Shown: one piece after another, positions 4,261 to 37,996 of the stretch
How positions within the stretch are numbered: the first letter of the stretch is position 1
How the letters are laid out: each line of letters begins with the position of its first letter
The notes under the pieces: generated by a model
Database searches by the model: none
What the model was told of the DNA's origin: nothing
The model's input: the letters and a program-made list of their open reading frames with translations, nothing else
Origin: Octopus bimaculoides
Lineage: Eukaryota
NCBI RefSeq assembly: GCF_001194135.2
Contig: NC_068997.1
Coordinates: 2,661,033 to 2,725,032 of the forward strand
Length of the DNA stretch: 64,000 nt
Reading direction: 5' to 3'
Program-made: the position numbers and the translations under genes

Positions 4261-4446
4261 AGGGACACTTGCGTAGATAAACGCACATGCACGTAAATGT
4301 GCGCACACATGCTGTTACCGTTGATAAGTAGTGACCAATAACAAAATTGAAGGAAGATTTTAATTCAAATTTTCGAGACCAATGCATCGTATGGAGAAGC
4401 TACCATTCGCACACACAAACTCATACACGCACCCTTCTAAGACATA

Positions 4447-4643
4447 GAATTGTTAGCACGCTGGATAGAGTGGTTTAGCAGTATTTCTTCTGGCTATACA
4501 CGCTGAGTTACATTCACCCTGATGTCAACTTTGCCTTTCATCTTTTTGAGGTCGACGAAGTAAGTACCAGCTGAGCACTCGAGTCGACGAAATTGATTAA
4601 CTCCCTTGTCATAAACTTCTGGCTTTGTGCCCACATTAGAAAT
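4447..4643 (+). mobile_element. SINE family B (tRNA-derived head, MetaSINE-like core), diverged
   Basis: Core gtcaactttgcctttcatc..gaggtcgac..aagtaccag shared with the other B copies. Confidence 0.75.
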
Positions 4644-6589: not shown

Positions 6590-6800
6590 TTCAAACTCTG
6601 ACACAAGGGCAGAAATTTCGGGAAAGGGTATAAATCGATTACATCGACCCCAATGTTCGACTAGTTTTTATCTTATCAACCCCGAAAGGATGAAAAGCAA
6701 AGCCGACCTGGACGGAATTTGAACTCAGAATTAGAAGACGGACGAAATGCAGCTAAGCATTTCGCCCGGCATGTTAACGATTCTGCCAGCTCGCCGTCTT
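6590..6800 (-). mobile_element. SINE family B, full length, type-2 tail
   Basis: Reverse complement reads ggcgagctggcagaatcgtt..ctgagttcaaattccgtcc..gctttgcttttcatcctttcgggg; B-box GAGTTCAAATTCC. Confidence 0.85.
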
Positions 6801-7449
6801 GCTCAAGATGAATACTAATTTTATCAATCTCACAGGTGTAACGGACCCTACGAATGCCATGACCCCCGTCCCTTCCTTCAAGCCCTAGCCCAGCAAATTT
6901 AAAAACAAAAATAATCCTTTCTTTAGACTTACTGGGAACCCGATTTAGAATACCATATTTCGGAACGAAATAAATACCATTTGAATATTATGGTTGTGGG
7001 AATCCAGTTCCACCCATTACGCACCCTCTAGATCTTGTGATCTTATGCTTTTGTAGGAATTAATATTCTTTGGAAACAAATATAATAATAAAATACCATT
7101 TATTCTCTCCTCTACAGAAACAGTCCGACATGTGTATATTATAAATAGTTTTACATCGATATGACTCAGCTATAATATAATATAATATAAATAATATTAC
7201 GTTAATATACCTCAGTTATAATATAAATGATATCTCGTTGATATAACTTAGCAGATATCGTGAAACTTATATCTTTTTATTAATCTCATATATCTGTGAT
7301 ATTTCTGTTTCGCCTTCAACAGTTGTCATACTGATATTACATTATCTGAAATATCTCACATCGTACAATAACTAAGAAATATTGTCGTTGTTGTTTTTGC
7401 TGTTGTTATTCATAATAATATTAATGATAAAGATAGGGATAATGTCGAA

Positions 7450-7521
<72 letters not shown>

Positions 7522-7617
7522 TTGTTGTCTCTTGGGGTCTCTGGGTGAGACTTGGATCCAACTTGTACAAATGCAAAACAAAAGTCAAACATAAAATAAT
7601 AATAATAATAATAATTG
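7450..7617 (+). repeat. (AAT)n microsatellite interrupted by a 73-bp unique insert (7521-7593)
   Basis: Directly visible. Confidence 0.9.
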
Positions 7618-7744
7618 AAAGCGGTAGAGATATACAATTAGAAAACTATAATATTACCGAAATATCTTAAGTTCAGAATCAAGGAAAATTGACGCATATA
7701 ACTACAAAACATGAACCAAATATATATATATATATATATATAAA

Positions 7745-8052
7745 AACTGTTCTCTGTCTTCGAGGAAACCGAAAAATACAAAGCAGAGGTTATAAGAACT
7801 GATGGCTCTAAAGGAAAAGGAGAAACAACAAAAACTGCAAAGCAGCTATAAATGTTAGGTAAAACTGGAACTATAAAATGCCATGATAAAACGATGGTAA
7901 GAAAAGTCCTTGCATGGCAGATACTTGAATAAGGAGAAATAGACAAAGTAACATTCCAACGCTAGTTGAGAAGAGCAGGACTCAATGCGGTGACTGAAGG
8001 GTTCTTATTTGCGGCACAAGATTAAAACCTTCTTCACCAGAGACCACCAAAA
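7745..8052 (+). mobile_element. R4/Dong-like RLE non-LTR retrotransposon fragment (post-RT linker)
   Basis: Interrupted translation ..KVLAW/HGRYLNKEK..LRRAGLNAVTEGFLFAAQD resembles the conserved WL..GLK.ETEG.I.AAQDQ block of this clade. Confidence 0.7.
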
Positions 8053-8060
8053 ATAATAAT

Positions 8061-8208
8061 GGTTTCGATTTTTGGCACAAGGCCAGCATGTTCAGGAGAT
8101 GGAGTAAGTCGATTATATCAGCCCCAGTGCTCAACTGGTACTTGATTTATCGACCCCGAAAGGATGAAGAACAAAGTCGACCTCGGCGGAATTTGAACTC
8201 AGACGTAT
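8061..8208 (-). mobile_element. SINE family B, head truncated, type-3 tail
   Basis: Core ggtacttgatttatcgaccccgaaaggatg..gtcgacctcggcggaatttgaactcag; tail ggtttcga..ggcacaaggccagc preceded by aataataat. Confidence 0.85.
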
Positions 8209-8212
8209 AGAC

Positions 8213-8340
8213 CAGTGTTTCTCAACACTTTTTTGCCTATTAACCCCTTTGATTCGTGTTTTACACGAATATATGTACCCTCCTAACCATTCGATGTTTA
8301 AAAGATTATAATACATTCTTATGATTGAATATTATTAGGA
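8213..8340. mobile_element. hAT-type MITE, one-end fragment
   Basis: Starts cagtgtttctcaac; aligns by eye to the reverse complement of 20600-20723. Confidence 0.65.
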
Positions 8341-8473
8341 AAAGATCCTTCTTAATTGACATTTCAGTCTAGACGGTTTAGTTTTATCGAACCCGGAAGG
8401 ATAAGCCGAAAAGTTGACGTCAACCGGATTTGAACTCAGAACGTATATAAATGACGCAATATATATTTTTCAC

Positions 8474-8695
8474 AAGGTAGCGAGCTGGCAGAAACGTTAC
8501 CACGCTGGGTAAAATGCTTAGCGGTATTTCGTCTGCTGTTACGTTCTGAGTTCAATTCCTCCCGAAGTCGACTTTGCCATTTATTCTTTCGGAGTCAATA
8601 AATTGAGTACCAGTTACACACTGGGGTAGATGCAATCGACTTAATCCCTTTGTCTGTCCTTGTTTGTCCCTTCTATGTTTAGCCCCTTGTAAGGC
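8474..8695 (+). mobile_element. SINE family B, full length, type-1 tail
   Basis: aaggtagcgagctggcagaaacgtt..ttctgagttcaattcc..gtcgactttgcc..atccctttgtctgtccttgtttgtcc..agccccttgt. Confidence 0.9.
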
Positions 8696-8703
8696 TAAAC
8701 ATA

Positions 8704-8846
8704 GAATTCCGCCGAGGTCGACTTTGCCTTTCAACTTTTCGAGGTTGATGAATAAAGTACCAGTTGCGTACTGGGATCGATTTAATCGATTGCCCCCCCC
8801 ACCTTCCTCCAAATTTCGGGCCTCGTGCCTAGAGCAGAAAAGAATA
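8704..8846 (+). mobile_element. SINE family B, 5'-truncated at the B box, type-2 tail
   Basis: gaattccgccgaggtcgactttgcctttca..ccaaatttcgggcctcgtgcctagagcagaaaagaat. Confidence 0.85.
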
Positions 8847-9622
8847 TATATTTTTCTCTACTTATTCTGCCTTCCAGATATTCTTACGAAATATTCCTCC
8901 ACTGTTAAAACTCAAAATTTTAGAAGGTAAAATTNNNNNNNNNNNNNNNNNNNNNNNNNNNNNNNNNNNNNNNNNNNNNNNNNNNNNNNNNNNNNNNNNN
9001 NNNNNNNNNNNNNNNNNNNNNNNNNNNNNNNNNNNNNNNNNNNNNNNNNNNNNNNNNNNNNNNNNNNNNNNNNNNNNNNNNNNNNNNNNNNNNNNNNNNN
9101 NNNNNNNNNNNNNNNNNNNNNNNNNNNNNNNNNNNNNNNNNNNNNNNNNNNNNNNNNNNNNNNNNNNNNNNNNNNNNNNNNNNNNNNNNNNNNNNNNNNN
9201 NNNNNNNNNNNNNNNNNNNNNNNNNNNNNNNNNNNNNNNNNNNNNNNNNNNNNNNNNNNNNNNNNNNNNNNNNNNNNNNNNNNNNNNNNNNNNNNNNNNN
9301 NNNNNNNNNNNNNNNNNNNNNNNNNNNNNNNNNNNNNNNNNNNNNNNNNNNNNNNNNNNNNNNNNNNNNNNNNNNNNNNNNNNNNNNNNNNNNNNNNNNN
9401 NNNNNNNNNNNNNNNNNNNNNNNNNNNNNNNNNNNNNNNNNNNNNNNNNNNNNNNNNNNNNNNNNNNNNNNNNNNNNNNNNNNNNNNNNNNNNNNNNNNN
9501 NNNNNNNNNNNNNNNNNNNNNNNNNNNNNNNNNNNNNNNNNNNNNNNNNNNNNNNNNNNNNNNNNNNNNNNNNNNNNNNNNNNNNNNNNNNNNNNNNNNN
9601 NNNNNNNNNNNNNNNNNNNNNN

Positions 9623-14362: not shown

Positions 14363-14425
<63 letters not shown>

Positions 14426-14426
<1 letters not shown>

Positions 14427-14970
14427 GTGAGAGAGCAGCACATACCATTAAAGTGGCACTGGGGCACAAATATACGAAGCTCATTATACCCATCATGACC
14501 ATCCGTCTGATGAGGGTACACCAAACACATGCATCATAACCATATGTGCGCAACATGGTGATCTTATATCAAGATAGACAGTGCATGACCTTGCAGGTGG
14601 GACCCAGTTAGAATTTTCTTCTGGTCGAGTAGCTCATCCCATTCAAAGGTCCCCGAATGAGGGTTGTTTAAGGATGTTGAATGAAACACCTATGTTTCCA
14701 GGAGCGAATTATTCAAATTCCAAAGAATTTCTCTCAACACACGGGTATGACGTTCCACCACCACCACCTCTGTTTGTGATCAGAGATGCACTAAGAGACT
14801 TGCTCAACTGGTTAAGGTCATACAAATGACAAGTACATCTGTGGTATTGGGCAGAATATTTTCTGTGGCTCATCTTTTACACTAAAACAAAACAACGTAC
14901 ATGATAAAACTTCCAATCAATTAAGATCAGAAACCATGAGAGCCACTGCCTGGCACTCGCATCACGGCAC
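14426..14970 (-). mobile_element. Orphan ~545-bp AAT-flanked element (family X), full-length copy
   Basis: Reverse complement aligns along its length to 53784-54351 and 52976-53277; microsatellite on both sides. Confidence 0.85.
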
Positions 14971-14978
14971 TGTTGTTG

Positions 14979-15048
<70 letters not shown>

Positions 15049-15072
15049 CATTATTATTATTATTATTATTTA

Positions 15073-17811
15073 TTGCCTTTGCACNNNNNNNNNNNNNNNN
15101 NNNNNNNNNNNNNNNNNNNNNNNNNNNNNNNNNNNNNNNNNNNNNNNNNNNNNNNNNNNNNNNNNNNNNNNNNNNNNNNNNNNNNNNNNNNNNNNNNNNN
15201 NNNNNNNNNNNNNNNNNNNNNNNNNNNNATGTACTTCTCAAGATTTTTACTCACTGGTCCCAGGGCTCCGACAATTATTGCTACTACTACCACTTTTTTC
15301 AGCGACCACAACTGCTTAACCTCCCAAGCTAACCTGTCATATCTATCGACTTTTCTGTCTTCCTTATCACATACCTTGTTGTCAGTTGGGCATGCTATAT
15401 CTATGATCCAGATTTTGGTCCAATCTAAAGTTCCAACTTCATATTTGATTAGGAGTACTGCTCTTGCATGTGTTGTTTCTGTAACATTTAAAAAATCCAA
15501 CTTTGTAATATTTTTCTCAATCTCCTTGTACGCTCTCTACTGGTAATTTGTTTTATCGCTTTATGTCTTATTTTATCCGCCTCCAGGATCCCCGAATACC
15601 CATACCACTGTCCTTTCTTATCTTCTTTTATTGTTTGCCCATTTGATATTTCTATTTCCTGGCTTCCTTCTAATCTTTCTCGTTTCATTATCAATATAGC
15701 ACATTTTTCAATCCCAAATTCCATACCTACATCATTTGAGAAAATGCGAACAGCATGTACAAGACTTTCAAGCTGCCTCTCGTTTATCGTATAAAAATTT
15801 ATATTATTCATAAAAAGGAGAGTTCATCTGACCATATCCTTTATTCAAATCATAAGCTACTTTAAATTCTCGTAACATCAAACTTAGCGGTATCATGGCC
15901 AATAAAAATATTAATGGAGGCAAGCTTTAAATATACTACTTTCTCAAATCTTTGTTTTCTTTCAATCAGTTCAGTATTTCAATGTTTTATACTTTAATTA
16001 TCCATTTTCTCCCTATTTTATTCCACTTCAAAGATGTTCATTGTTTTACTTAACTGTACGGTACCATACCGTATACTTTTGTTTAATCCAACTAAACTAC
16101 ATTCAATTCTGTCAGTCTGCGTCTACAATTTCTAATATTTTTATCAACTAATGACTGGTCTTTAGTCACCTTACTTTGCTTCCTGAATGCTTTTTGTTTG
16201 TTCTACTAGAAATAGATTGCTACTTTCCAAATGATTATATAATTTTTGCCAAAACACCGGACATGAGCTTCCACATAAGGGGTAAACAAGTTATAGATCG
16301 AAAATTTGATATCAATTTACCATTCAAGAGTTCCTTGGGACATAACCAACATTCGTCCACTTGTTATCCAGGTAGGGATGTGTCCCTGCTGCAGATATTC
16401 ATCCAGGTGTGCTGCAATCCTTTCTTCAGCCATTAACCTTGTACTTCATCCGGGCCAGGTCCTTTTTAATTTGCTATTTTTTAAACTTCAGTCTCACTAA
16501 ATGCAGATCATTTCTGACATCCTTTTGTCTTGGTATATTTGCAAGTTGTTCTCCACCTATGTTAGCCACTCTGCACTTTCCTTATGTCTCACTGGACTGT
16601 TTCAAAGTTCTTACTTTCGCATCAAGAACCACTTCCTAATGTTGTTTCCCACTGTATCCTTTAAAAGACGCTTTCTACTTGATTGAAACAATGTATTCGG
16701 TTCAAAATCTTTGCATCTAGCACCATATCATTTCAATTTGGCTTTTAACGCCGTCACCTCTTATTTGCTTGCTCCTTTCTTCTTACCCGTACTGTCCATT
16801 CAATTTTCTGATTACTATTTCATTCTTTCAGCTCTCTTTTCATTATTCTATTCAGTTGCCCCAATTCTTTCCGTGTCTTTTCTAGTTTCATTTGCATTAT
16901 TTCCCTCCCGTCAGCGTCTTTCTTTTCATTCTCCGTCTTTCCTTCAACAGTTTTCTGCTTTTATCCTATTATGTCAGTTACAACATTAGCAGCAGTTATG
17001 ATTTCTTGATTTCTTCCGCTAATGTTCTCTGTTTTAACTAAACGCAGAATGCCATTTACTTTGCCTGTGGCTCTCTTTACTTTTCCTCTGTCCATATGCC
17101 TTACATTTGGTGACACTTCATTGTTTACACCACACATTTTACCTCGCAGCATTTCAAGAATCCTCTTCTCTTCATCTTTCAACTCTTGTGAAACATTTAC
17201 AGTCACTTGTCCAACTTGTTCATCTTCACTATTTACTTCATCAGCAATCTCAGGCACATAGTGATTTAAAAAATTTTCATTTTCTTTATCACTATCTCTT
17301 TCTACCACTGTTGTTTCACTCCCTTCCTGTTCATTTTTTATTCTTCTTTAAATTTCTTCAACTTCTAATCCTGCAATTCAATCCTAAATTGCCTTTGCCT
17401 GATCTATCAATCGTTGGGTGGAAGCTTCACAAATCCTTTTTCATCCCATATTCTCTTCATTCATCTCGTGTGAAATCTCTTTTAATTGGCTCACTTTTTT
17501 CAGTCACAATCTTGTTCACCTCTTTTTCCCATTTCATTTTCTCCCCTTTGCACTTTTCACTTTGATTCTGGTCCGGATCAAAGGCTTGATGACGATCTGC
17601 TGGACCTTGATCAGACACACCTTGCTTGCCGAGCACGACACCTTCCTTGATAACAGTTCCGGTTTCGATAACGCAGTTATGATTTTTATTTAAATTTGAT
17701 ATCACTCATTTTGCGATAGCATTCGCAAGGTTGTACAATCACCAGCATTTTTATCGTGACACCATCAATAGGCTGATTGCCAACCAAGGCTCAGAGAGTT
17801 CACGCATACCC
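15073..17811 (-). mobile_element. R4/Dong-like RLE non-LTR retrotransposon, near full length, decayed and internally deleted
   Basis: Ordered motifs: KWEKEVNKIV..QRLIDQA (N-terminus), DRGKVKRATGKVNGIL..TENIS, GPDEVQG, FRSITCLPLMWKL, TKDQSLVDK, RIFSNDVGMEFGIEKCA, then RLE domain IIDIACP.D..KVDRYDRLAWEVKQLW..VAIIVGALG. 5' flank ttaataata; 3' end followed by (AAT)n. Includes a 144-nt gap. Confidence 0.88.
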
Positions 17812-18730: not shown

Positions 18731-20029
18731 AATGTAAATTGAATTATAGAGCGTCAGAGAAATGGATAGTTGCTGTTTTCGTTGTGATTTTTTGAAATTC
18801 AGGAATAAACTTCTAACCTGAGGCCATAATGGCTAAGTGGGAATTCCACCTCTGCAACCTTATTTTGAAGATATGGAAAGATTCTTCGATGCGAATAACG
18901 AGGAAACTAATAATTCCAGGAAAAATATCCGAAAGAATAACTATGTAGTTCCCTTTGTTTCCCCTGAAAGGAAAATAGAAGGTTACTTCGTGTATATGAA
19001 AACAAATAGTTGTGGTATATAATTTTCCTGCATTTTCGTTCAATAAGACAGAAAATAGATCTTGTAGATAAAATAAGCCAAACAGTAGTTCTATCTTGTA
19101 GATAACATAATGCAAACAGTAATTCTACCACAACTGGTTTGGAAATACAGATTTAATACCAAATTTCAACTTGGAATATTCTAAACATTAATTTGCCGCT
19201 TCAAGTTAAAGTTTACCTGAATACGTTTGCAAATGCTGATGGAATTCTTCATGTTTTAGCAAGTCAATGTGCAAAGAAAACGCTTGGTAAAAATAATTCT
19301 TGATAAAAGAAAACAACAACAACAACGACGACGACGACGACAATAAACGGAGAAAACTGTGTGAAGTCAAATACGATTCATCTTCAGAATATGGAAGATT
19401 TAATATGGATGCCATTTTCAAATGTTGCCAGAGTTCAAATATATTCACCGAAAACGGTCTGTGAAGAAATTTCTTAAACAATAATTGGACGTGATTGTGT
19501 CTGTGTGAGAGAAAATCGCTTCTATGAAGGTGTGTGTGCTTGTAAGAAGAGATAAGTGTTTGTGAACATATTTTTCTTATAGCGTGTGTTTACGAGGGTA
19601 GGTTTATCTTGTGTATAAAAGGATTTTCTTTGCATAATACTGGACGTGTATCTCTAACAGCAAATTTTCCAGTGTGTAGAGAGCCACCAACTCGAACGCA
19701 ACGTTACGATTCCTTTCATCTGTTATGTGAGAGAGAAATGAGAGTGTAATTAAGGGAGAGAACTGTTATTATACTGTGTTACTGTGGTGTAGAGAGAAAC
19801 TTATCGCTACTGAGATGATTTTTCCTGGTCATTCATCTATTTTGGTAGAAGCATGAAGAAACTTCCGGATATGCATAAGTGACAATCTATCGTTTGCACT
19901 GTGTATCACGATTTTTGTCCTTGGGTAGCGAGTGTAATTTCCAATTTGTTTACCTCTAGAAAGTATGAAAGATGGTTAACATTTCCTTCAAACTTTGCTT
20001 TTGTTACATTTAATTGAAACTCCAAAGAA

Positions 20030-20185
20030 TCCTTCTCAGCACATGGCTATGATGCTCGCCACCCCACTATTCCTGATCATGATCAGAGATACACGTATTA
20101 TCAGCCACTAAGGGACATGCTCAAGTAGTTAAGGTCAGATTTTAAAAGCAAATCTGTGGTATTGAGCAGATTATTTGCTATAACG
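20030..20185 (-). mobile_element. Family X internal fragment, diverged
   Basis: cacatggctatgatgct..cagccactaagggacatgctcaa..gcaaatctgtggtattgagcaga matches the reverse complement of 53945-54085. Confidence 0.8.
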
Positions 20186-21859: not shown

Positions 21860-22409
21860 TTTTGCCATGATGATGATTATGATGATGATGATGATGATTA
21901 TGATGATGATGAAGATGATGATGATGATGAGGATGATGATGATAAGGATGACGGTGTTGGAGTTAGTGGTGCCAGGTAGCTCAGATAGAAAGTTATGTAA
22001 GTCGGATGATGGAAGCGGTTATAAATGGACGTAGATCACGTTAGCCGTGGTGGTGGCGGTGGTGGTGGTGGTGGCGGCTGTGTTATTGGTTTTGGTGGAG
22101 TCGTGGGGTGATGGAAGTTTGAGGTGATATGTGGCAGGTTGGGAAGAAGGAGGAGAGTGTGTGGTTAGCGGGGAGTTGTTTTAAGCCTGATGAGAAAATT
22201 AACATGACAAGTCTTGTCAGATTAAAAGTTTAGTTAAAATAAGAAACTACCACAAGAGGAAACTTCATCGTCGTCGTCGTCGTCATCATCATCATCATCA
22301 TCATCATCAACATCATCAACATCATCAACATTATTATTATTATTGTTATTGTTGTTGTTGTTTTTATTATTATTTATTATTATTATTACTATTACTGTTG
22401 TTGTTATTG

Positions 22410-22464
<55 letters not shown>

Positions 22465-27648: not shown

Positions 27649-28758
27649 ATAGAGAGAGGAAACTTTTTTCCATGAAGTTCTCTTCTCGGTTATGGTTGAG
27701 CCTTTTCCCTTTTACTAAGCCACTGTTTACGCCGTTTAACATTTCGATAGAAGATCCAGTTTTAGTCACCAGTCACAAGTCTATCCAAAAAGGGTGAAAT
27801 GAGTTCGTGTATATGTACATGTTTGCACGCGCACGCAGGTGCGTGTTTCTGTGTGCGTTTCGACTCTGTTCGTGTTTCGACTCTGGTTAAGTATGTCATC
27901 CGGTTAGTAAACTTTGACTGGGTCCAAAACTTTGGTTTCATCGCTAATGTGTCCATGTAACATCAGTCCGCTACTACTTCCAGTTTACAGCTCTAGCCTG
28001 CCACTATTCTTTAAGTGCTATTGAGAGTAGCAGCATCAGGTTTTGATGCGAAAAAGCAAACCCTGGCATACTTTTCTTACTAATTTTTCTACATGTAGAA
28101 ATTTTTGCTCACATGTAGTTGCAGTTATGACTCCAATTTATAGAGGAATTAATTCTTGTAAAGCAAAATGCTGGGAAGTAAAATGCTTATTGCCTATATA
28201 AGTTTTAAAAAACAAAACTTCCTGGAAAACTCCACAGCTATGCTTTTGCGTGAATCTTTTCTGATTTCTTCAACATTGGGTCTTCTACATTTTGTGAATC
28301 CTCAAAAAAGAACAGTAACCGATTTTCTATAGTAACAACCTGATGATATGAATCTGATGCACCCAAACAAGACACACTTGTTTTACATGCCTGAATGACT
28401 TCTGAATAATAACTCAACTCCAACTGCACCCAATAAAATCTTCTATAATATCTTTCCATCAGCTCTCATCTGACAAACAATCTTCCTCCCATTCTCCACT
28501 ATAACACTAAATGCATATCTACATCTTAGACGTGCGTACACCAAGCCTAGTTATTATTCTTCATAAATCTACCTTCCCAAGAAAAATAACTTACAAAAGA
28601 GTGTATAAATCCAAGACGAGCCCAAATACAGGTCAAAACTTCAAAGCTACTGTCTCTCCTCTTCTTGTACTCACATTAATTTATTGAGTAATTCTTCAGT
28701 TTAATGCCAAATTGTTTTATAACTCGACATAAAACAAACATTAATATAACTATATATC

Positions 28759-28957
28759 AAGGCGGAGAGCTGGAAGAAACGTTAGCAGGCCGGATGAAAT
28801 GCTTGGCAGTATTTCGTCTGTCTTTAGGTTCTGAGTTCAAATACCACCGAGGTCGACTTTGCCTTTCATCCCTTCGGAATTAAGTACCAGTTGCGCATTG
28901 GGGTCGATCTAATCGACTGGTCCCCTCCCCCAAAATTTCGGGCCTAGAAAAGAATAT
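28759..28957 (+). mobile_element. SINE family B, full length, type-2 tail
   Basis: aaggcggagagctgg..ctgagttcaaatacc..gtcgactttgcctttcatcc..cccctcccccaaaatttcgggcc. Confidence 0.9.
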
Positions 28958-34705: not shown

Positions 34706-35399
34706 AAAGTACAAAGTTTACTTTAACAACGGTAAGTGGTGTAGTTTCTGCTTCTTTGAAGTATTGTAGTTTCTGCTTCATCCAGGTGCCTAACAAAATT
34801 CCATAAACGGTGATATCTACCCCTGCCCTCATGAGCGAAGATATAGATTAGCAAATTGGTTAGCTGCATCGTAAATGTAACCGCAAGCTCTTCTCCTCAA
34901 TCATTTTATACAACGCCTTCTGATATGTGCTGAAACCACTGGCTTGCTTTTTCAAGAGCGTATTTTCCACATGATTCCGAATCTACAGTTTTTGCTACGT
35001 TATCATGGTGTCGCTCCTATTATTATAGTCTCATAATATAGTGAACCCTTGATGTGATGGTCATACAGAAATATTTAGGTACGACTAAATTTCCCTTTAG
35101 AACTAATTCAATAACCACTAGCCCTCATCAATGTGAGGCTTAATGTCATAACTCTAACGAGACATGTATGGACATTGAAGGAAAATGTTGCGTATTGCGA
35201 CATCAACTGCAGGATACTGGAAAAATAAAAGGCTTACTTTAACAACAACAGGCGGAGTAGTTTCTGCTTCGCTGGACCTCCCGTCATCCAGGCACCTACC
35301 AAAATTTTATAAGCGAGGAGTTTTGCCTCTGCCCTCATGAGCGCAGATATGGGTTAGTGAACTGGTCTGCTACATCATAAATGCAAAAGTTGGCTCCTA

Positions 35400-37024: not shown

Positions 37025-37095
<71 letters not shown>

Positions 37096-37098
37096 TAA

Positions 37099-37164
37099 AT
37101 GACCTGATGCAGTAACCATGCCCTGATGCAGTAAAAGGCAGTGGCTCTCATGGCTTCTCATGGC
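37099..37164 (+). mobile_element. Family X 5'-only fragment with short internal duplications, after (AAT)n
   Basis: atgacctgatgcagtaacc-atgccctgatgcagtaaaaggcagtggctctcatggc-ttctcatggc. Confidence 0.8.
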
Positions 37165-37996
37165 AAACTTATATAAAACAGAAAAAACAAGAAAAGCCAA
37201 TTAGACGTAGACAGTGATTGTATTAGATTGACGCTCAATGAAAGTTTTAGATGGAAAAAAAAAAAGAGACAAAATGACGTTTCGCTCGTGGCTGTTTCGG
37301 AAACAGGTAAAAGTCCAGAGATATATTTTGAAACCCTGGGGTCGATATAATTGACTATTCCCCTCCCCACTAATTTCAGGCCCTGTGCCTTTATTAGAAA
37401 GGATTATTAGCATTGTGCTACCACAGCAATCACAAGAGATTTATAAGGGGTTAGAGGGCGTGAGGTGGGGGTGAAGTGGGGGTGGCCTCACCCAATTTTA
37501 TACAGTAGTTACCATTTTTGGAATCAAGTTGAATGAAAATTCTCTTCAGTTGTCGGAGACTATTTAACGTTATTCTGGCTCGGTTCTTAATTTCGTTGCA
37601 GAACGAATAAATCGAACTGGCTGACCGAAACAAGCCAATGGCGTTGCAGAGTTTATTTCCCAAAGGGCGACAATCTGTTACGATGATAGAGAACATCGCC
37701 AACAACAACAAGAACAACGCTATCGATTATGACTATGATAATAGTGATGATGGAGATGATTGTGATTATTGTGATGATGGTGATGATATCGATGATAAAA
37801 GAGATTCTGAAAGAAATAGGATGAATGAGCAGTAGAGTTCATTGAAGTGGTTAATTAATCTGGGACCAATTCTAATTTTGCTTTCCTTTAATTTGTTTCT
37901 TCTTTGCGAGGAAGGAAGGAAACTCGGAAATCTTTCTGATATTTTCCAAATACTGAAAACTTCAATTTGGAATTGGATGTTAGAATGGACAAATTA

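What the first reader, a model, noticed from the sequence alone, without database searches (positions are those of the whole stretch)
14363..15072. Orphan ~545-bp retro-like element (family X) that inserts in (AAT)n tracts
Five related pieces occur (14426-14970 -, 20030-20185 -, 37099-37164 +, 52976-53277 +, 53784-54351 +). Four abut (AAT)n runs, always with AAT on the element's own sense strand. The two visible 3' ends coincide (..ctgctctctcact-AAT) while 5' ends vary (52976 starts internally), the pattern expected from target-primed reverse transcription. I see no TIRs, no ORF and no properly spaced Pol III A/B boxes, so it is neither a MITE nor a tRNA SINE. A hairpin near the 3' end (cagtg..cactg around gtca-ctt-tgat; variant gcca..tggt in the 14.4-kb copy) could be a recognition signal. 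Inference: a non-autonomous partner of R4/Dong-like RLE retrotransposons, which are known to target TAA repeats; one lies immediately adjacent at 15073.
Basis: partly seen in the sequence, partly recalled or inferred. Interest (0 to 1): 0.72.

Follow-up and report, generated by a model that had tools for sequence, protein, structure and literature searches.

The report
Octopus retroposon living in AAT microsatellites
This is a real, roughly 550-bp non-coding repeat family of octopus genomes that sits inside (AAT)n microsatellites in a fixed orientation, as the neighbouring Dong/R4-type LINE does, so it is probably a parasite of that LINE; it is a useful transposon annotation and not a major surprise.

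Summary
Family X has five pieces in the window, at the stated coordinates. Five of nine visible ends lie within 15 bp of a pure (AAT)n tract (chance 0.6% per end), always with AAT on the same strand of X.

The host is Octopus bimaculoides or a very close relative. At least 14 short UniProt "proteins" of that species are spurious ORFs over other X copies. A contig from another sequencing project holds two X copies in tandem (X-(AAT)-X) with the same termini.

The neighbour at 15072-17700(-) is a degraded RLE-type LINE. An intact relative matches R2 by sequence and structure, has CCHC and PD..D..K motifs, and ends in (AAT)n followed by a second LINE copy. X is not the LINE's 3' UTR.

Not supported:
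- The 3' hairpin.
- "5' ends vary": three of four coincide.
- Any sequence shared with the LINE.
- An HDV-like 5' ribozyme of the kind Dong and R4 carry.

A conserved 10-bp hairpin lies near the 5' end instead.

Best reading (about 0.55): a non-autonomous retroposon moved in trans by Dong-R4 LINEs into (TAA)n. The partnership is inferred from shared target and polarity only. I could not check whether X is already catalogued.

The parts
14426..14970 (-). X copy A, full length (545 bp); 5' end GTGCCGTGATGCGAG..., 3' end ...CTGCTCTCTCACT
14365..14425 (-). (AAT)20 tract directly after the 3' end of copy A (read on the minus strand)
14971..15071 (-). (AAT)~29 followed by (CAA)4 (minus-strand sense), lying between the LINE 3' end and the 5' end of copy A
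15072..15084 (-). Last 13 nt of the LINE 3' UTR (gtgcaaaggcaat), homologous to ...GCAAAGGGAA... at the end of the L001 LINE 3' UTR; the rest is in the N gap 15085-15228
   Evidence: p=0.013
15229..17700 (-). Degraded Dong/R4-like LINE: frame-shifted RT, then the second half of the RLE (IIDIACPTD...K..RY...GALG). The CCHC and RPD part is deleted.
   Evidence: class
20013..20185 (-). X copy B, internal fragment (X positions ~100-270), no AAT flanks, not part of the LINE
37025..37093 (+). (AAT)23 tract directly 5' of copy C
37099..37166 (+). X copy C: a 19-nt duplicated 5' terminus followed by X positions 2-49 only
52916..52975 (+). (AAT)n tract directly 5' of the truncated copy D
52976..53276 (+). 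X copy D: 5'-truncated (starts about position 80), internal deletion of about positions 255-425, canonical 3' end
53277..53430 (+). Degenerate trinucleotide tract 3' of copy D (ctatagtaataatgac(gat)6(AAT)n, with a 10-N gap)
53709..53782 (+). (AAT)~25 tract between one end of an S SINE copy and the 5' end of X copy E
53784..54351 (+). X copy E: canonical 5' end, 3' end lost in the N gap at 54352; a 42-bp assembly duplication flanks the 10-N gap 53908-53917

Best explanation
X is a roughly 545-560-bp non-coding, non-autonomous retroposon family of octopods. It has no recognisable Pol III head. It integrates into (TAA)n/(AAT)n microsatellites in a fixed polarity, with TAA on its sense strand at both junctions.

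The most likely driver is the Dong/R4-type LINE family of the same genome, which carries a reverse transcriptase and a restriction-like endonuclease. In this model the LINE protein nicks a (TAA)n target. An X transcript ending in (UAA)n pairs with the nicked (TTA)n strand and is reverse-transcribed in place. The element is left flanked by the split tract, and repeated hits on one tract give head-to-tail arrays (LINE-(AAT)n-X, X-(AAT)n-X, LINE-(AAT)n-LINE).

Shown: the family, its termini, tract association at both ends, polarity, conservation in a second genome, the class of the LINE and the LINE's own tract association.

Inferred: the RNA intermediate, trans-mobilisation by this particular LINE, and priming through the tail repeat. 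How the defined 5' end of the RNA arises is unknown. A conserved hairpin at X positions ~36-61 is the only structural candidate.
For: Tract association is far above chance, and it holds at both ends.
- The 3' end is followed by an AAT-type tract in 5 of 5 cases: A, D, L2a, L2b in L002, and P0131, which reads LLLLLLLLL-SERRAH.
- The 5' end is preceded by AAT in 6 of 9 cases: A, E, C, truncated D, L2b, and P0135, which reads AWYCIWA-F-IIIIIII.
- The tract 53709-53782 borders the 5' end of X-E on one side and an end of the unrelated S element on the other.

The family has a defined unit.
- Three window copies and L2b share the 5' terminus TGCC(C)TGATGCAGT.
- Four copies share the 3' terminus TC(T/C)(C/A)ACT.

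The neighbour is an R2-like RLE LINE.
- RVT_1 and homologues to 5e-70.
- The nearest PDB sequences are R2 proteins (1e-22) ahead of L1 ORF2p (1e-12).
- CCHC and PD..D..K columns are invariant in 12 relatives.
- The AF2 model superimposes on R2 proteins (E 5e-11, TMq 0.6, about 420-450 columns) and then on PD-(D/E)XK nucleases.

The LINE family itself ends in (AAT)n and forms LINE-(AAT)53-LINE in L001. The window shows LINE-(AAT)29-X in the same polarity.

Literature: Dong targets (TAA)n in a moth, a mosquito and a snail. A full-length Dong consensus exists for O. bimaculoides. Dong-R4 is the most abundant recently active LINE class in O. vulgaris.

X has no coding capacity: its frame translations hit only spurious O. 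bimaculoides gene models.
Against: - Neither end of X is similar to the LINE 3' UTR (the comparator is a 77%-identical relative plus 13 nt of the window copy).
- No HDV-like ribozyme at the 5' junction, although Dong and R4 have one: Rfam finds nothing, and a descriptor search gives 0, 0 and 2 candidates against about 2.3 expected by chance.
- Only one 5'-truncated copy. One copy (C) keeps only the 5' end.
- D and E may be a local duplication.
- Three other copies lack AAT right at the 5' end: L2a, and P0126 and P0129, which share the flank 'LANLWY*'.
- Only 3-4 independent loci in the window, plus one contig and peptide-level glimpses elsewhere.
- No empty site was seen.
Confidence: 0.55

Rival explanations
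1. X is a non-autonomous retroposon driven by a different LINE, for example the octopus RTE, whose 3' UTR is mostly a microsatellite. In this reading the AAT tract is X's own expanded 3' tail. Upstream tracts arise because tailed RNAs prime preferentially on existing AT-rich microsatellites or on the tails of other elements. X's true sense could even be the reverse, with an (ATT)n tail.
For: The octopus RTE-2_OV 3' UTR is largely a microsatellite (PMC9115989). The abundant S SINE in the window also carries AAT/ATT tracts at one end in about 5 of 9 copies. In the reverse orientation, copy C would be an ordinary, severely 5'-truncated copy with a tail. X shares no sequence with the Dong-like LINE.
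Against: Tracts occur at both ends of X, unlike S, whose other end is rarely tract-associated. That polarity equals that of the Dong-like LINE. The RTE tail motif is not known to me, and no RTE copy was found in the window.
Confidence: 0.2
2. X spreads mainly at the DNA level. It would be a sequence embedded in compound trinucleotide microsatellites and copied by unequal crossing-over or segmental duplication between AAT tracts, not by retrotransposition.
For: D and E are the closest pair and lie 500 bp apart in one tract complex. L002 holds a tandem pair. P0126 and P0129 share an identical non-AAT flank. No TSD, poly(A) or empty site was seen.
Against: Copies lie at dispersed loci within the window (14 kb, 20 kb, 37 kb, 53 kb). 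At least 14 distinct spurious gene models elsewhere in the genome carry X. Unique flanks differ between copies. Termini are sharp and shared across two genomes. Pairwise divergence of 0.15-0.31 looks like a dispersed old family.
Confidence: 0.1
3. X is not separate. It would be a distal part of a Dong-like LINE subfamily: a 3' UTR extension beyond an internal (AAT)n, or the 5' UTR of the next LINE copy in an array.
For: Copy A lies directly downstream of a LINE in the same orientation, separated only by (AAT)n.
Against: The related LINE in L001 ends before the tract, and another LINE follows it, not X. The 5' ends of E, C and L2b coincide, and beyond their tracts the upstream sequence is not LINE. 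X ends at a fixed 3' terminus followed by a tract and does not continue into an ORF. BLAST finds no similarity between X and L001.
Confidence: 0.07
4. X is a DNA transposon derivative (MITE or Helitron-like) with a preference for AT-rich targets.
For: It is short and non-coding, with AT-rich target sites.
Against: No terminal inverted repeats (score 7 against a null of 6, p=0.25). The termini are not TC...CTRR. The polarity is fixed relative to the AAT strand.
Confidence: 0.03

Closest known systems
Dong (Bombyx mori) and Dong-R4 LINEs (DongAg, DongBg; octopus Dong-R4 families)
   Same: Both insert in (TAA)n microsatellites with TAA on the sense strand at both junctions and form head-to-tail arrays. 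One such LINE lies immediately upstream of X copy A.
   Different: Dong is autonomous: about 4-5 kb, with RT and RLE. It carries an HDV-like ribozyme at its 5' end. X is 0.55 kb, non-coding, shares no detectable sequence with the LINE, and shows no ribozyme.
R2 SIDEs (short internally deleted, non-autonomous R2 derivatives of Drosophila; recalled from memory, not read here)
   Same: Non-autonomous elements that use the machinery and the specific target site of an RLE-type LINE, and that have no Pol III head.
   Different: SIDEs are made of the LINE's own 5' ribozyme and 3' UTR. X shows neither in the comparisons possible here.
LP-SINEs and other mollusc SINEs with non-tRNA heads (PMC4758252)
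   Same: Short mollusc retroposons that lack a tRNA head and depend on a LINE partner.
   Different: LP-SINEs have a LINE-derived 5' end and are not reported to be microsatellite-targeted. The origin of X's 5' end is unknown.
Microsatellite-associated repeat families generated by RTE LINEs in Lepidoptera (PMC2887409) and the octopus RTE-2_OV
   Same: Interspersed repeats whose ends are joined to microsatellites, which produces 'microsatellite families'.
   Different: There the microsatellite is the element's own 3' tail. X has tracts at both ends and shares polarity with a Dong-like LINE.

Membership tests
Non-autonomous partner of a Dong/R4-clade LINE | Same integration target, (TAA)n, and same polarity as the LINE | tested here: met
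   AAT on the X sense strand at both junctions, and arrays LINE-(AAT)n-X, X-(AAT)n-X and LINE-(AAT)n-LINE.
Non-autonomous partner of a Dong/R4-clade LINE | 3'-terminal sequence or structure shared with the LINE 3' UTR (stringent recognition) | tested here: inconclusive
   No similarity to the L001 LINE 3' UTR (p=0.17-0.8) and no conserved 3' structure. The proper comparator, the O. bimaculoides Dong-R4 3' UTR, lies in the N gap and was unavailable.
Non-autonomous partner of a Dong/R4-clade LINE | 5' HDV-like self-cleaving ribozyme at the junction, as in Dong, R4 and R2 SIDEs | tested here: not met
   Permissive Rfam scan: none. Descriptor search: 0, 0 and 2 candidates against about 2.3 in shuffles.
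Non-autonomous partner of a Dong/R4-clade LINE | Series of 5' truncations with constant 3' ends (target-primed reverse transcription) | tested here: inconclusive
   One truncated copy (D), four full 5' ends, and one 5'-only fragment (C).
Classical SINE (Pol III, small-RNA-derived head) | tRNA, 5S or 7SL-derived head with A and B boxes | tested here: not met
   ARAGORN finds nothing. Rfam finds nothing at gathering score or at E<=10.
Classical SINE (Pol III, small-RNA-derived head) | No internal T4+ terminators upstream of the 3' end | tested here: not met
   T4+ runs at positions 62, 79 and 84 in the sense strand, and at 189, 434 and 450 in the antisense strand.
Dong/R4-clade RLE LINE (the neighbour at 15072-17700) | Reverse transcriptase closest to the R2 group | tested here: met
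   RVT_1. R2 proteins are the best PDB sequence hits, 1e-22 against 1e-12 for L1.
Dong/R4-clade RLE LINE (the neighbour at 15072-17700) | C-terminal CCHC zinc knuckle plus PD-(D/E)XK restriction-like endonuclease | tested here: met
   Invariant C283, C286, H295 and C300, and P368-D369...D384...K400, in 12 relatives. The fold matches R2 over 418-456 columns and then PD-(D/E)XK nucleases. The window copy keeps only the D...K half.
Dong/R4-clade RLE LINE (the neighbour at 15072-17700) | Insertion in (TAA)n | tested here: met
   The window 3' end abuts (AAT)29. L001 shows LINE-(AAT)53-LINE.
Dong/R4-clade RLE LINE (the neighbour at 15072-17700) | Phylogenetic placement within R4/Dong as opposed to R2, Hero or NeSL | not tested
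   No reference Dong, R4, Hero or NeSL sequences were available. Assignment rests on target site and on published octopus annotations.
3' UTR of an autonomous LINE | Continuity with an upstream LINE ORF; 5' ends that do not coincide | tested here: not met
   The LINE ends before the tract in the window and in L001. X 5' ends coincide in A, E, C and L2b.
MITE / DNA transposon | Terminal inverted repeats | tested here: not met
   (p=0.25-0.28).

The most novel reading that the evidence does not exclude
X would be the first described non-autonomous parasite of the Dong/R4 clade. In this reading it is a head-less, microsatellite-targeting retroposon conserved across octopods, recognised by the LINE through its (UAA)n tail alone. 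It would shape its 5' end by a means other than the HDV-like ribozyme, possibly involving the conserved hairpin at positions 36-61.
Probability: 0.4. Interest if true: 0.55.

Novelty: new member of a known kind. Interest (0 to 1): 0.38.

Why it matters
If the partnership is real, X offers a small natural substrate for working out what an R2-like, sequence-specific LINE needs in an RNA template. Here the requirement might be nothing more than a (UAA)n tail. That question matters to work on site-specific retrotransposon-based gene insertion.

X also explains part of the microsatellite landscape of octopus genomes: 6 of the 17 AAT tracts in this window touch an X copy. It flags at least 14 UniProt 'uncharacterized proteins' of O. 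bimaculoides as translated repeats. It would also let some of the hundreds of 'unclassified SINE' and 'unknown' families in cephalopod repeat libraries be assigned to a driver.

If the partnership is not real, X is one more old interspersed repeat.

Tried and rejected
- Pfam on the raw three-frame translations of the LINE gave nothing. Only a frame-stitched pseudo-protein gave a weak RVT_1 hit, and that query found nothing in PDB.
- UniRef hits could not be traced to DNA.
- Two scans of JGI metagenome contigs with conserved X words found nothing.
- X words are absent from the roughly 400 kb of O. vulgaris transcriptome held as a supplement.
- The flank upstream of copy C looked LINE-like by eye but is not (p=0.6).
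- Copy B is not inside the LINE 5' region. The LINE coding signal stops near 17.7-18 kb, and frames upstream are low-complexity.
- The second LINE hit, at 34900-35016(-), is a 39-aa scrap with no tract.
- A CUGAUGA motif on the antisense strand of copy A suggested a hammerhead ribozyme. It is not conserved in D or E, and Rfam finds no hammerhead.
- Solo-LTR (TG...CA) and Helitron (TC...CTRR) termini do not fit the shared ends.
- The antisense open frame (83 aa in A) has no homologues outside spurious O. bimaculoides models, so X is not a decayed gene.
- I assumed the S SINE has a tRNA head, but Rfam did not confirm it. Arguments that depend on the orientation of S were therefore down-weighted.

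Full report
**What the window is.** The window is a draft eukaryotic scaffold with 25 N gaps, about 33% G+C, and a very high microsatellite content. Translations of the element in question hit only short 'uncharacterized proteins' of Octopus bimaculoides in a 5.8-billion-protein database. The host is therefore O. bimaculoides or a very close relative.

**The observation.**
- A: 14426-14970(-), full length, 545 bp.
- B: 20013-20185(-), an internal fragment.
- C: 37099-37166(+), only the first ~50 nt, preceded by a 19-nt duplication of the terminus.
- D: 52976-53276(+), starting near position 80, with an internal deletion of about 170 bp.
- E: 53784-54351(+), with an intact 5' end; its 3' end is lost in an N gap, and there is an assembly duplication around a 10-N gap.

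A and D end identically (...CTGCTCTCTCACT). A, E and C begin identically ((A/G)TGCC..GATGC.AGT..AGGCAGTGG).

Five of nine visible ends lie within 15 bp of a pure (AAT)>=4 tract, against 0.64% expected per end. Copies differ by K2P 0.15-0.31, so the family is old. D and E are the closest pair and are neighbours, so they may not be independent.

**What X is not.**
- Not a tRNA SINE or any Rfam family: no tRNA and no Rfam match at gathering score or at E<=10.
- Not a MITE: no terminal inverted repeats.
- Unlikely to be a full-length Pol III transcript: T4+ runs occur in both orientations.
- Not a decayed gene: one antisense frame is unusually open, but its only relatives are the O. bimaculoides models.
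- The 3' hairpin is not supported. It folds no better than shuffled sequence (z -0.1 and -0.4), and a consensus fold of four 3' ends from two genomes predicts nothing there.

**The neighbour.** On the minus strand the order is: degraded LINE (17700->15229), N gap, 'gtgcaaaggcaat', (AAT)29(CAA)4, X copy A, (AAT)20, unique DNA.

A frame-stitched pseudo-protein hits RVT_1 weakly and finds 343 homologues, to 5e-70. P0094 is 77% identical over the C-terminal part.

In its 1.6-Mb contig (L001), the LINE ORF stops and a 95-nt 3' UTR ends '...GAGCAAAGGGAAGAACAT'. About 160 bp of (AAT)n follows, and then a second, 5'-truncated copy of the same LINE begins. The window's 'GCAAAGGCAA' matches that UTR end (p=0.013).

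An intact relative is closest to R2 proteins among solved structures (1e-22, against 1e-12 for L1 ORF2p). Twelve relatives have invariant CCHC and PD...D...K columns. An AlphaFold model of P0094 (pLDDT 74) superimposes on R2 proteins over 418-456 columns (E 5e-11 to 2e-8, TMq about 0.6). Its next-best matches are PD-(D/E)XK nucleases.

The neighbour is therefore an R2-like, RLE-type LINE that sits in (TAA)n. That is what defines Dong (PMC3812793). A full-length Dong consensus is known for O. bimaculoides (PMC9115989), and Dong-R4 is the most abundant recently active LINE class in O. vulgaris (PMC13282606). I made no phylogeny.

**X elsewhere.** No DNA of the host genome was reachable, so I used spurious ORFs as probes. 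(ATT)n has no stop codon in any frame, so ORFs that run out of X report its flanks.
- P0131 reads '...ATK-LLLLLLLLL-SERRAH...': an (AAT)9 directly at the 3' end.
- P0135 reads '...AWYCIWA-F-IIIIIII-MLLSL...': an (AAT)~8 directly at the 5' end.
- P0126 and P0129 both continue past the 5' end into the same non-AAT peptide 'LANLWY*'. This may be a longer variant or a duplicated locus.
- A Logan contig from another project (L002, SRR11869391) holds two X copies, about 72% identical to the consensus, head to tail. The first ends ...GGTTCTACTC. Then comes 'aataataatattatcaataata'. The second starts TGCCCTGATGCAGT and ends ...TTGCTTCCCACTC, followed by 'aatattgatggtaatgac(gac)n'.

Overall, the 3' end is followed by an AAT-type tract in 5 of 5 cases, and the 5' end is preceded by one in 6 of 9.

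**Target or tail?** A tract at both ends (A, D, L2b) argues for integration into pre-existing tracts and against a 3' tail alone. So does a tract lying between the 5' end of X-E and an end of an unrelated SINE (53709-53782), and so does the 5'-truncated copy D directly abutting a tract. X is not the LINE's 3' UTR. The LINE ends before the tract in two genomes. X's 5' ends coincide. Beyond their tracts, the upstream flanks of E, C and L2b are not LINE.

**Tests of the partnership.** Dong and R4 carry an HDV-like ribozyme at their exact 5' end that cuts the element RNA out of a (UAA)n co-transcript (PMC3774820). X shows none: Rfam finds nothing, and a descriptor search gives 0, 0 and 2 candidates against about 2.3 expected by chance. 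Neither end of X resembles the LINE 3' UTR, although the right comparator is hidden in the N gap.

A consensus fold of four 5' regions recovers a 10-bp hairpin at positions ~36-61 (UUCUGAUC...GAUUGGAA). It pairs in 92.5% of cells against 22-52% when the partner is slid. Five pairs change on one side and stay paired, and none change on both sides. This is suggestive only.

**Verdict.** X is a genuine, conserved, non-coding interspersed family that lives in (AAT)n tracts in one polarity. The most economical mechanism is trans-mobilisation by Dong-R4 LINEs into (TAA)n, perhaps recognised through the (UAA)n tail alone (confidence about 0.55).

The rivals are:
- another LINE, such as the microsatellite-tailed octopus RTE, about 0.2;
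- DNA-level duplication between tracts, about 0.1;
- a distal part of the LINE, about 0.07;
- a DNA transposon, about 0.03.

The family is very likely present, unclassified, in existing octopus repeat libraries. I could not check Dfam or Repbase. I rate it a new member of a known kind and of moderate interest.

Noticed in passing
window 4446-4607, 6599-6801, 8049-8212, 8473-8654, 8705-8823, 28739-28945, 37333-37409, 53478-53708, 55288-55396, 55418-55621, 58918-59101: An abundant SINE-like family ('S') of about 200-230 bp. One strand has a B-box-like GTTCAAATTCC and a motif that, from memory, resembles the CORE domain of MIR/OR1-type SINEs. Rfam finds no tRNA, so its orientation is unverified. 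About 5 of 9 copies have an AAT/ATT tract at the end opposite the putative head, and two copies are in tandem across (AAT)7 at 55397-55417.
   Followed up: partly
UniProt A0A0L8I0P0, G3R2, H316, G9T0, IF69, H6S8, HJ33, I1L9, FNA5, FFV7, FX38, HEN8 (and two metaclust entries): Short 'uncharacterized proteins' of O. bimaculoides are translations of X copies, mostly of the antisense strand. Some are chimeras of X with other sequence (P0130, P0132, P0133), which suggests that X is exonised in transcripts or that these are gene-model artefacts.
   Followed up: partly
window 53866-53959: An assembly artefact: the same 42 bp (cttggtataaaaaagatgggttacagcaaatattctgctcaa) is present on both sides of the 10-N gap 53908-53917 inside X copy E.
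   Followed up: yes
L001 11417-11672 and 11673-12418: In the related genome (ENA ERZ25066843), two copies of the Dong-like LINE lie head to tail across about 160 bp of (AAT)n, and the downstream copy is 5'-truncated. A different retroelement ORF (RVT_1, DUF8422, HTH_animal) lies at 7070-9319(-).
   Followed up: partly
window 42434-42721 (+): An ORF fragment emerging from an N gap reads like the N-terminal DNA-binding region of a mariner-type transposase (...SGRPSI...HELILEDRHRTIDEL...). Pfam does not confirm it at E<=0.01.
   Followed up: partly
window 34900-35016 (-): An isolated 39-aa scrap of the same LINE family (the region between the zinc knuckle and the RLE), with no AAT tract nearby.
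   Followed up: yes
window 22330-22464, 49309-49618, 50039-50441, 53277-53475: AAT tracts in this window are commonly compound: (CAA)n(AAT)n(GAT)n(GAC)n. The same AAT-to-GAT/GAC transition follows the 3' ends of X copy D and of L2b in L002.
   Followed up: no
X positions ~36-61 (window 14910-14935 minus strand; 53819-53844 plus strand): A conserved 10-bp hairpin, UUCUGAUC-N6-GAUUGGAA, is kept in four copies from two genomes through one-sided changes. Its function is unknown.
   Followed up: partly
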